Shown one piece after another: positions 34,724 through 35,314 of a stretch of DNA of 64,000 bases. This DNA is from Magallana gigas (taxonomy: Eukaryota), in assembly GCF_963853765.1 (NCBI RefSeq), contig NC_088860.1, positions 13,702,001 to 13,766,000 of the forward strand, given 5' to 3'. A model generated the notes under the pieces. It was not told the origin of the DNA. It was given only the letters and a program-made list of their open reading frames with translations, and did not search any database. Made by a program: the position numbers and the translations under genes. Position 1 is the first letter of the stretch; the number at the start of each line of letters is the position of its first letter.

Positions 34724-35314
34724 ATGAAGTCTGCTAGCGTGATGATTCTAGTTTTGATGACGTCAGTCTATGCCTCTCCAATACAGCGAAGAGAGCTTGA
34801 GGAAATGGCAAGTAAGTCCAAGCTTCAGTTGGTCGCAGAAAACGCATTCTCCCACATAATTCTTACACCTTCAACCAAGTTTGTTGCTTAGATTATCGAT
34901 CAGTTGTGGTTCTCTATTCCAAAACTCAGCAGAAAATAGTTCAAACAAAATTAATGAGGCTCCAAAAAAAATTCTAGGAAGTTTGATATGCAATAAATTT
35001 CCCCGTTTTTTTTTTTTGGTAGCTTTTTTACGTGTTTGTTCACTGTTCATGATTTCCTTTCAGCACACACCACCGTGAAACCCGATTACAACGCCATATT
35101 GCATCAGCTAGGGGAATACTTCAAAGGTAGAGACCTCCACACGAGGCAGTTGGTACCCGTTGCCGGGGACTCCGACGTTGCTAGGGACGACATTCTTCAC
35201 GAGTTGGGCGAGTACTGGAAGGGGCGCATAGCGGCACTTAGCGCAGTCTTGTCACAACATAGCACCCAACAACACATTAACTTGTTCTCCCAGTTACTGA
35301 ATAATTTGAAATAA
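34724..35314 (+). CDS. Small secreted protein / candidate peptide precursor; 112 aa, 2 coding exons
   Basis: Exons 34724-34811 (MKSASVMILVLMTSVYASPIQRRELEEMA, donor GTAAGT) and 35064-35314 (acceptor TTTCCTTTCAG) join in phase 1 to 339 nt. Signal-peptide-like N-terminus, an RR site and two ILH[QE]LGEY[FW]KGR repeats. AATAAA overlaps the stop (35310-35315). Confidence 0.8.

What the first reader, a model, noticed from the sequence alone, without database searches (positions are those of the whole stretch)
34724..35314. Unrecognised secreted precursor encoding two related, potentially amidated peptides
Spliced product: MKSASVMILVLMTSVYA-SPIQRR-ELEEMATHTTVKPDYNAILHQLGEYFK-GR-DLHTR-QLVPVAGDSDVAR-DDILHELGEYWK-GR-IAALSAVLSQHSTQQHINLFSQLLNNLK. 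Signal peptide, dibasic RR and two copies of ILH[QE]LGEY[FW]K, each followed by G-R (amide donor plus monobasic site), is classic neuropeptide/hormone precursor logic. The LGEY[FW]K-amide ending does not match any molluscan peptide family I can name, so it may be an undescribed signalling or pheromone peptide.
Basis: partly seen in the sequence, partly recalled or inferred. Interest (0 to 1): 0.75.

Follow-up and report, generated by a model that had tools for sequence, protein, structure and literature searches.

The report
New bivalve amidated-peptide precursor gene
This is a real, spliced and expressed Pacific oyster gene for a small secreted protein from an unnamed family, found so far only in oysters, mussels and scallops, that looks like the precursor of short amidated signalling peptides; nobody has yet shown that the peptides are made.

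Summary
ATG 34724, GT..AG intron 34812-35063 and stop 35312-35314 give a 112-aa product. RNA contigs from three studies carry that splice and add a non-coding 5' exon (33177-33261).

The gene is single-copy in the Pacific oyster. It lies between the same two neighbour genes in Crassostrea virginica and Saccostrea echinata.

Profile searches found relatives in Mytilus and four scallop genera, all labelled "uncharacterized". Each has 2-5 copies of a 10-residue amphipathic core, [ILV][LV]Hx[ILVF]G[DE][YF][FWY]K. In 30 of 31 copies the core is followed by Gly and then R, RR, KR or KK. Oysters have G-R where mussels and scallops mostly have G-KR or G-KK.

Between oyster genera, synonymous sites are saturated. 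Non-synonymous change is 0.05-0.08 per site in the repeats against 0.31-0.39 elsewhere. No globular fold is predicted. There is no Pfam, PDB or literature match.

The amidated-peptide precursor reading is therefore well supported by comparison. Cleavage, amidation, tissue and receptor are untested, and the oyster monobasic sites are atypical. It is a new family of a familiar kind. The scan noted other oyster-only candidate precursors on other DNA, but not this one.

The parts
33135..33143 (+). TATA-like element (TATATATAG), 34-42 bases upstream of the first transcribed base seen
   Evidence: Read directly. Its position relative to the contig 5' ends comes. The promoter role is inferred.
33177..33261 (+). 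Exon 1, non-coding 5' UTR
   Evidence: contigs of X1 and X2 both start at 33177 with sequencing adapter directly in front. Joint 33258(+3)->34713(+3) is GT..AG. The donor AG|GTGAGT is read.
33262..34715 (+). Intron 1 (1454 bases)
   Evidence: skipped in X1 and X2 contigs. X3 has an allelic variant of the same joint.
34716..34811 (+). Exon 2: 8 bases of 5' UTR, ATG at 34724, 29 codons plus the first base of a split Thr codon
34724..34774 (+). Predicted signal peptide, 17 residues, with Val at -3 and Ala at -1 before Ser-Pro
   Evidence: Lys at position 2; the best 10-residue Kyte-Doolittle mean is 2.70 at residues 6-15. All orthologues show the same layout. SignalP was not available.
34812..35063 (+). 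Intron 2 (252 bases, phase 1)
   Evidence: joint 34811->35064 in three studies. The same phase-1 intron sits at the homologous codon in Saccostrea and C. virginica.
35064..35466 (+). Exon 3: the rest of the coding sequence (to 35314) and the 3' UTR. The 3' end is not fixed: one contig reaches 35466 and another covers 35353-35557. AATAAA lies at 35491-35496.
35096..35131 (+). Copy 1: 10-residue core (35096-35125), then Gly (35126-35128) and Arg (35129-35131)
   Evidence: The only variant seen here in RNA, 35098 A>C, is synonymous.
35186..35227 (+). Copy 2: Asp-Asp plus 10-residue core (35186-35221), then Gly-Arg (35222-35227), preceded by Arg (35183-35185). The core plus Gly is invariant in oyster, mussel and scallop.
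35228..35311 (+). Oyster-only 28-residue C-terminal tail with a conserved INLFS block. It ends in Lys in C. gigas, S. echinata, C. virginica X1 and P0012 (Asn in C. virginica X2).
   Evidence: It is absent from the mussel and scallop proteins.

Best explanation
This is a single-copy, three-exon Pacific oyster gene. It encodes a 112-residue preproprotein of an unnamed family, seen so far only in pteriomorph bivalves (oysters, mussels, scallops).

Most likely mechanism: the signal peptide takes the protein into the secretory pathway. Prohormone convertases cut after the basic residue(s) that follow each copy. A carboxypeptidase removes those residues, and peptidylglycine alpha-amidating monooxygenase turns the exposed Gly into a C-terminal Lys-amide.

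The products would be short amphipathic helical peptides. In the oyster these are a 12-mer from copy 2 (calculated mass 1515.74 Da), bounded by a conserved Arg/Lys in front, and a longer N-terminally extended peptide from copy 1. They would act as extracellular signals on a receptor that is still unknown.

Shown: the gene, transcript, splicing, single copy, synteny, family, and conservation focused on the cores and their Gly-basic sites. Inferred: secretion, cleavage, amidation, signalling, and the cell type that makes it.
For: - Transcript and splice joints stand in three independent RNA studies. Exon depth in run X1 is 1000-4000 against 3-5 in the intron.
- The gene is single-copy. The same neighbour genes flank it in three oyster genera.
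- Family members were found by profile searches in M. edulis, A. irradians, P. maximus, M. yessoensis and Y. balloti.
- Of 31 copies of the core, 30 are followed by Gly and then R, RR, KR or KK. Copy number varies from 2 to 5, and spacers vary freely in length and composition.
- Arg or Lys stands directly before the last-copy 12-mer in oysters and before both Mytilus copies; the last copy of the scallop proteins has none.
- Between oyster genera pS is 0.66-0.98. pN is 0.05-0.08 in the repeats against 0.31-0.39 elsewhere.
- The two C. gigas copies share 10 of 12 residues but 1 of 12 codons.
- All members have hydrophobic N-termini. The cores are amphipathic, with a hydrophobic moment near 0.6.
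- No globular fold is predicted: AF2 gives pLDDT 63 and pTM 0.29, with isolated helices only. The Atlas model of the C. virginica protein has pTM 0.18.
Against: - No peptide has been seen. The two oyster peptidome papers hold no such sequence. The 2021 study searched its spectra only against known precursors, so that blank says little.
- The oyster sites are monobasic K-G-R, with no basic residue at P4, P6 or P8. Site 2 has Ile or Leu at P1'. By the usual empirical rules for monobasic processing (my own knowledge, not tested here) both features are unfavourable.
- Oysters have a conserved 28-residue tail after site 2, and AF2 draws one unbroken helix through that site. Copy 2 may therefore stay joined to the tail in oysters.
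- The family is missing from the ganglion-based precursor lists for oyster and scallop. Those searches were largely homology-driven.
- The tissue of the high-expression runs is hidden by coded ids.
Confidence: 0.62

Rival explanations
1. The intact protein of about 95 residues, made of two or three amphipathic helices, is the mature secreted product. It might be a carrier, a matrix component or a surface-active protein. In that case the conserved Gly-basic pair is a structural helix cap and not a processing signal.
For: AF2 predicts helices exactly over the repeats, plus one long helix at pLDDT 70-80 from copy 2 to the C-terminus. The oyster sites are monobasic and atypical, and the oyster tail is conserved. 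Depth is very high in one RNA run, which would also fit an abundant structural or secretory product.
Against: No tertiary fold is predicted (pTM 0.29; 0.18). Copy number varies from 2 to 5. Spacers are unconstrained in length and composition, including Thr-rich stretches. The residues after Gly are always basic and mostly dibasic outside oysters. The oyster tail is missing altogether in mussels and scallops. That pattern is what precursors show, not folded repeat proteins.
Confidence: 0.2
2. The precursor is processed as proposed, but the peptides are not internal neuro-hormones. They would be made by a non-neural secretory tissue and released to the outside, as a pheromone, a gamete or larval cue, or a host-defence peptide.
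For: The gene is absent from the ganglion-derived precursor lists for oyster and scallop. Abundance differs strongly between samples: exon depth is in the thousands in X1 but only a handful of reads among 12.9 million in the poly(A) run X21.
Against: The ganglion surveys were homology-driven and could not have found a new family. The cores are neutral to acidic, with net charge 0 and -3, unlike cationic antimicrobial peptides. Near-invariance of a 12-mer across oysters, mussels and scallops is more usual for a ligand of a conserved internal receptor than for species-specific external cues.
Confidence: 0.15
3. It is not a functional protein-coding gene: a transcribed non-coding RNA with a chance open frame.
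For: None beyond the small size and the absence of a known domain.
Against: The protein is conserved across oyster genera with saturated synonymous sites and a five-fold to six-fold lower non-synonymous rate in the repeats. Relatives exist in mussels and scallops. Intron position and phase are conserved.
Confidence: 0.01

Closest known systems
Bivalve-restricted neuropeptide precursors described in oyster and scallop (for example GNamide, LXRYamide, SLRFamide, WGAGamide; PMC8398477 and PMC5996578)
   Same: They are small precursors (under about 150 residues) with a signal peptide. They carry one or a few conserved peptides ending in Gly plus basic residue(s), and their spacers evolve fast. They are restricted to bivalves or molluscs, and orthologues are shared by oysters and scallops.
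   Different: There is no sequence relation. The C-terminus here would be Lys-amide after an aromatic pair. This family is not in those lists. No mass-spectrometric detection or ganglion expression is on record for it.
Multi-copy amidated neuropeptide precursors of molluscs (FMRFamide, LFRFamide and myomodulin type)
   Same: Several near-identical copies of a short peptide are each followed by Gly and a basic site. Copy number differs between lineages. The scallop members (3-5 copies with G-KK, G-KR or G-RR) look just like this.
   Different: The conserved core is longer (10-12 residues or more), helical and amphipathic, and ends in Lys rather than an RF- or RL-type end. The oyster version has only two copies, monobasic sites and an extra conserved tail.
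Lys-amide helical peptides of molluscs: the Lys-amidated 20-mer listed for the scallop PKYMDT precursor (PMC5996578) and Aplysia egg-laying hormone (my recollection, not checked here)
   Same: A C-terminal Lys-amide sits on a peptide predicted to be helical. This shows that Lys-Gly-basic sites are used in molluscan precursors.
   Different: The whole-library profile search found no detectable similarity; it returned only the new family plus two false positives and two weak, unplaced hits. Peptide lengths and motifs also differ.

Membership tests
Amidated peptide-hormone / neuropeptide precursor (functional class) | N-terminal signal peptide | tested here: met
   Lys is at position 2. The hydrophobic core spans residues 6-15 (Kyte-Doolittle mean 2.70), with Val at -3 and Ala at -1. 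All seven species checked show the same design. This was judged by hydropathy and inspection only; SignalP was not available.
Amidated peptide-hormone / neuropeptide precursor (functional class) | Conserved peptide(s) bounded by mono- or dibasic cleavage sites | tested here: met
   all 31 copies are followed within two residues by R, RR, KR or KK. Arg or Lys stands directly before the last-copy 12-mer in oysters and before both Mytilus copies. The oyster sites are monobasic and atypical in context.
Amidated peptide-hormone / neuropeptide precursor (functional class) | Gly (amide donor) directly before the basic site | tested here: met
   30 of 31 copies. The exception is the first copy of A. 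irradians, which reads K-R-P.
Amidated peptide-hormone / neuropeptide precursor (functional class) | Selection concentrated on the peptide, with spacers free to vary | tested here: met
   pN is 0.05-0.08 in the repeats against 0.31-0.39 outside, with synonymous sites saturated; the invariant columns of the oyster-mussel-scallop alignment all lie in the two repeats.
Amidated peptide-hormone / neuropeptide precursor (functional class) | No globular fold of the precursor | tested here: met
   pLDDT 63, pTM 0.29, two isolated helices; pTM 0.18.
Amidated peptide-hormone / neuropeptide precursor (functional class) | Mature cleaved, amidated peptide detected | not testable with these tools
   No spectra are available. 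Published oyster spectra were searched only against known precursors.
Amidated peptide-hormone / neuropeptide precursor (functional class) | Expression in neurons or endocrine cells | not testable with these tools
   Transcription is shown, but run and sample names are coded, so the tissue is unknown.
Any named neuropeptide family (Pfam, or the mollusc and spiralian surveys) | Sequence match to a described precursor or peptide | tested here: not met
   Pfam gives nothing above threshold for nine family members, and PDB gives none. Motif and accession searches of the paper library, and of four survey papers with their supplements, found nothing relevant. Sequences printed only in figures are not searchable.
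ELH / DH44 / CRH-type helical amidated hormones | Detectable profile similarity to ELH-type precursors | tested here: not met
   the profile search of 1.84 billion representatives returned only the new family, two clear false positives and two weak hits from unknown organisms. No ELH reference sequence was aligned directly.

The most novel reading that the evidence does not exclude
In oysters the site after each copy has become a fixed monobasic Lys-Gly-Arg, whereas mussels and scallops mostly keep Gly plus two basic residues. If oyster peptides are released without trimming, they would end in Gly-Arg. By my recollection (not checked here), peptides with a C-terminal Arg, with Gly-Gly-Arg as the model compound, are the classic water-borne settlement cue for oyster larvae. 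The most novel reading not excluded is that this gene supplies such an external cue or pheromone, and is not an internal hormone.
Probability: 0.06. Interest if true: 0.85.

Novelty: new member of a known kind. Interest (0 to 1): 0.55.

Why it matters
Bivalve endocrinology still has many orphan receptors and few lineage-specific ligands. Here a 12-residue peptide core plus its amidation signal is essentially unchanged between oysters, mussels and scallops. These lineages separated in the early Palaeozoic (my own knowledge). That points to a conserved receptor-ligand pair nobody has looked at, in animals of major aquaculture value.

The family gives concrete, cheap tests:
- a defined mass to look for in existing peptidome data;
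- synthetic peptides for receptor deorphanisation;
- a single-copy gene for knock-down.

It also shows that homology-driven precursor surveys miss whole families.

Tried and rejected
- **Paralogues.** None in the window or the genome.
- **Pfam.** The exons and eight relatives gave only sub-threshold noise.
- **PDB profile search.** Nothing.
- **ESM Atlas look-alikes.** Scores of 0.83 or lower (KRTDAP and others), below the tool's own noise level, so rejected.
- **Literature.** Six accession numbers and about 20 short motifs gave only chance hits: a plant SST protein paper, HIV Vpr, a nematode paper and an NPF-receptor sequence.
[quoted passage not shown] None fits.
- **False positives of the big profile search.** P0032 is a 661-residue repeat protein whose repeats carry a chance LGDYFKG match. 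P0033 is an 856-residue TPR-like repeat protein.
- **Old UniProt model K1Q4E6.** Its N-terminus starts at an internal AG (34785-34786). It lacks the signal peptide and no RNA contig supports it, so it is rejected as a mis-prediction.
- **Source organism of P0031** (a metagenome contig). It could not be identified. Its apparent N-terminus starts at a TTG called by a prokaryotic gene finder and is probably intron.
- **Antimicrobial peptide reading.** Rejected on charge.
- The junction-spanning database protein P0002:37-127 was used by reference instead.

Full report
**What is there**

The window is Pacific oyster DNA, G000 contig 8, 13,702,001-13,766,000. Species names on the closest proteins confirm this.

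On the + strand an ATG at 34724 opens 29 codons that end at a CAA|GTAAGT donor (34811/34812). A tttcag acceptor at 35063/35064 restores the frame through a split Thr codon. The frame then runs for 82 more codons to TAA at 35312-35314.

All searches used the exons by reference, or the stored database protein P0002 (UniProt K1Q4E6). Its residues 37-127 span the same junction.

**Is it a real gene?**

Reads and contigs of four RNA runs were laid on 33000-36500.
- Contigs from three different studies carry the joint 34811->35064 (GT..AG). One raw poly(A) read does too.
- Two studies also show an upstream non-coding exon, 33177-33261, joined to 34716. Both contigs begin at 33177 with adapter sequence directly in front.
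- TATATATAG lies 34-42 bases upstream of that point.
- One 605-base contig of X2 is adapter + 33177-33258 + 34713-34811 + 35064-35466.
- Exon depth in X1 is 1000-4000 against 3-5 in the intron. The poly(A) run X21 gave only a handful of reads among 12.9 million, all with the first mate on the minus strand. That orientation is what most stranded libraries give for a + strand RNA.

Expression is therefore real and differs strongly between samples. The samples are coded, so the tissue is unknown.

The old UniProt model K1Q4E6 replaces the signal peptide with unrelated upstream sequence through an AG inside exon 2. No contig supports it.

**Copy number and neighbourhood**

The gene is single-copy in the genome, both with the exon protein and with a family profile. 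It has no paralogue in the window.

In C. virginica and Saccostrea echinata the orthologue lies between the same two genes as here. Upstream is a + strand gene of about 255-262 residues, whose exons match the window at 29.9-31.7 kb. Downstream is a minus-strand gene of about 800 residues, matching 38.9-43.2 kb.

The phase-1 intron sits at the same codon in all three oysters.

**The family**

The word search found only oyster orthologues. A profile of these found Mytilus edulis and Argopecten irradians proteins. The exhaustive profile search added Pecten maximus, Mizuhopecten yessoensis and Ylistrum balloti. It also added a metagenome contig of unknown origin. Every named record is "uncharacterized protein".

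Nothing outside these pteriomorph bivalves reached E <= 0.001 except four hits. Two are obvious repeat-protein false positives. Two are weak hits from unknown organisms.

tabulates 31 copies of the core [ILV][LV]Hx[ILVF]G[DE][YF][FWY][KR].
- 30 of 31 copies are followed by Gly and then R, RR, KR or KK.
- Copy number is 2 in oysters and mussel and 3-5 in scallops.
- Spacers differ freely in length and composition.
- The last copy, DILHELG[DE]Y[FW]K-G, is invariant from oyster to scallop, with one Ile/Val change in Mytilus.
- An Arg or Lys stands directly before the 12-mer in oysters and before both Mytilus copies.
- In Mytilus each copy has its own exon.

**Selection**

Between the three oyster genera, synonymous sites are saturated (pS 0.66-0.98). 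Non-synonymous differences are 0.05-0.08 per site in the two repeats plus G-R, against 0.31-0.39 in the rest of the exon.

Within C. gigas the two copies share 10 of 12 residues but 1 of 12 codons. This is an old duplication held by selection on the peptide. The only RNA variant seen inside a repeat (35098) is synonymous, and so are 35137 and 35140 just downstream of copy 1. The variant at 35246 (Val/Leu) lies in the tail.

**Structure**

AlphaFold2 with the family alignment gives pLDDT 63 and pTM 0.29. It draws a helix over copy 1 and one long helix from copy 2 to the end, with no packing. The Atlas model of the C. virginica protein has pTM 0.18. The cores are amphipathic, with a hydrophobic moment near 0.6. 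All members have a canonical hydrophobic N-terminus.

**Interpretation**

The pattern is that of a prohormone:
- a signal peptide;
- a variable number of near-identical short peptides;
- each followed by the amide-donor Gly and a basic site;
- constraint on peptide and site but not on spacers;
- no fold.

The oyster G-R is the local form of what is G-KR, G-KK or G-RR in most copies of its relatives. C. virginica has G-RR at site 1. I therefore put 0.62 on processing to Lys-amidated signalling peptides.

The caveats are real:
- No peptide has been observed.
- The oyster sites lack a basic residue at P4, P6 or P8, and site 2 has Ile or Leu at P1'.
- Oysters alone carry a conserved 28-residue tail, so copy 2 may stay attached to it there.
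- Neither ganglion survey lists the family. However, those surveys searched by homology to known precursors, and the 2021 oyster study searched its spectra against known precursors only. Their silence is weak evidence.

**Comparison with what is known**

No Pfam family and no solved structure matches. There was no hit for six accessions or about 20 motifs in 8.4 million papers. The text and supplements of the oyster, scallop and spiralian surveys also gave nothing. None of the twelve mollusc-specific oyster precursors named in 2021 fits. Sequences shown only in figures cannot be searched, so an earlier description cannot be fully excluded.

It works like the multi-copy amidated precursors of molluscs. 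It resembles the bivalve-restricted families (GNamide, LXRYamide, SLRFamide) in size and range, but it belongs to none of them.

**Verdict**

This is a new family of a well-known kind. Biochemical proof, tissue and receptor are still open.

Noticed in passing
window 34785-34787: The old UniProt model of this gene (K1Q4E6, P0002) enters exon 2 at an internal AG. It replaces the signal peptide with 36 unrelated residues. No RNA contig supports that joint, so the public protein record lacks its true N-terminus.
   Followed up: partly
window 33351-33545 (inside intron 1): Run X2 has contigs of depth up to about 560 that match only 35-40 bases here and then run on into unlike sequence. This looks like a short repeat or a piece shared with other transcripts, not part of this gene.
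   Followed up: no
window 38870-43216, minus strand: A large gene of about 800 residues (weak B-box hit in the Saccostrea record) is 84-95% identical at protein level to the downstream neighbour in C. virginica and S. echinata. With the upstream gene at 29.9-31.7 kb it frames a conserved three-gene block.
   Followed up: partly
L007 8001-8620 (C. virginica); P0003, P0005, P0006: C. virginica has two protein variants of the orthologue. One changes the Arg of the putative N-terminal site to His, and the C-terminal Lys to Asn. This suggests these two positions are not essential.
   Followed up: no
P0034 and P0035 (JGI metagenome proteins, E about 1e-4): Two short proteins from unknown organisms carry repeated motifs close to the family core. 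One has VLHELREYFK-GKK twice; the other has GDFFK-TK three times behind a signal-like N-terminus. They may be distant members or chance look-alikes.
   Followed up: no
L002 6001-11085 (Mytilus edulis): In the mussel each of the two peptide copies lies in its own exon, giving three coding exons over 5 kb. In oysters both copies share one exon. The repeats may have arisen by exon duplication, or an intron was lost in oysters.
   Followed up: partly
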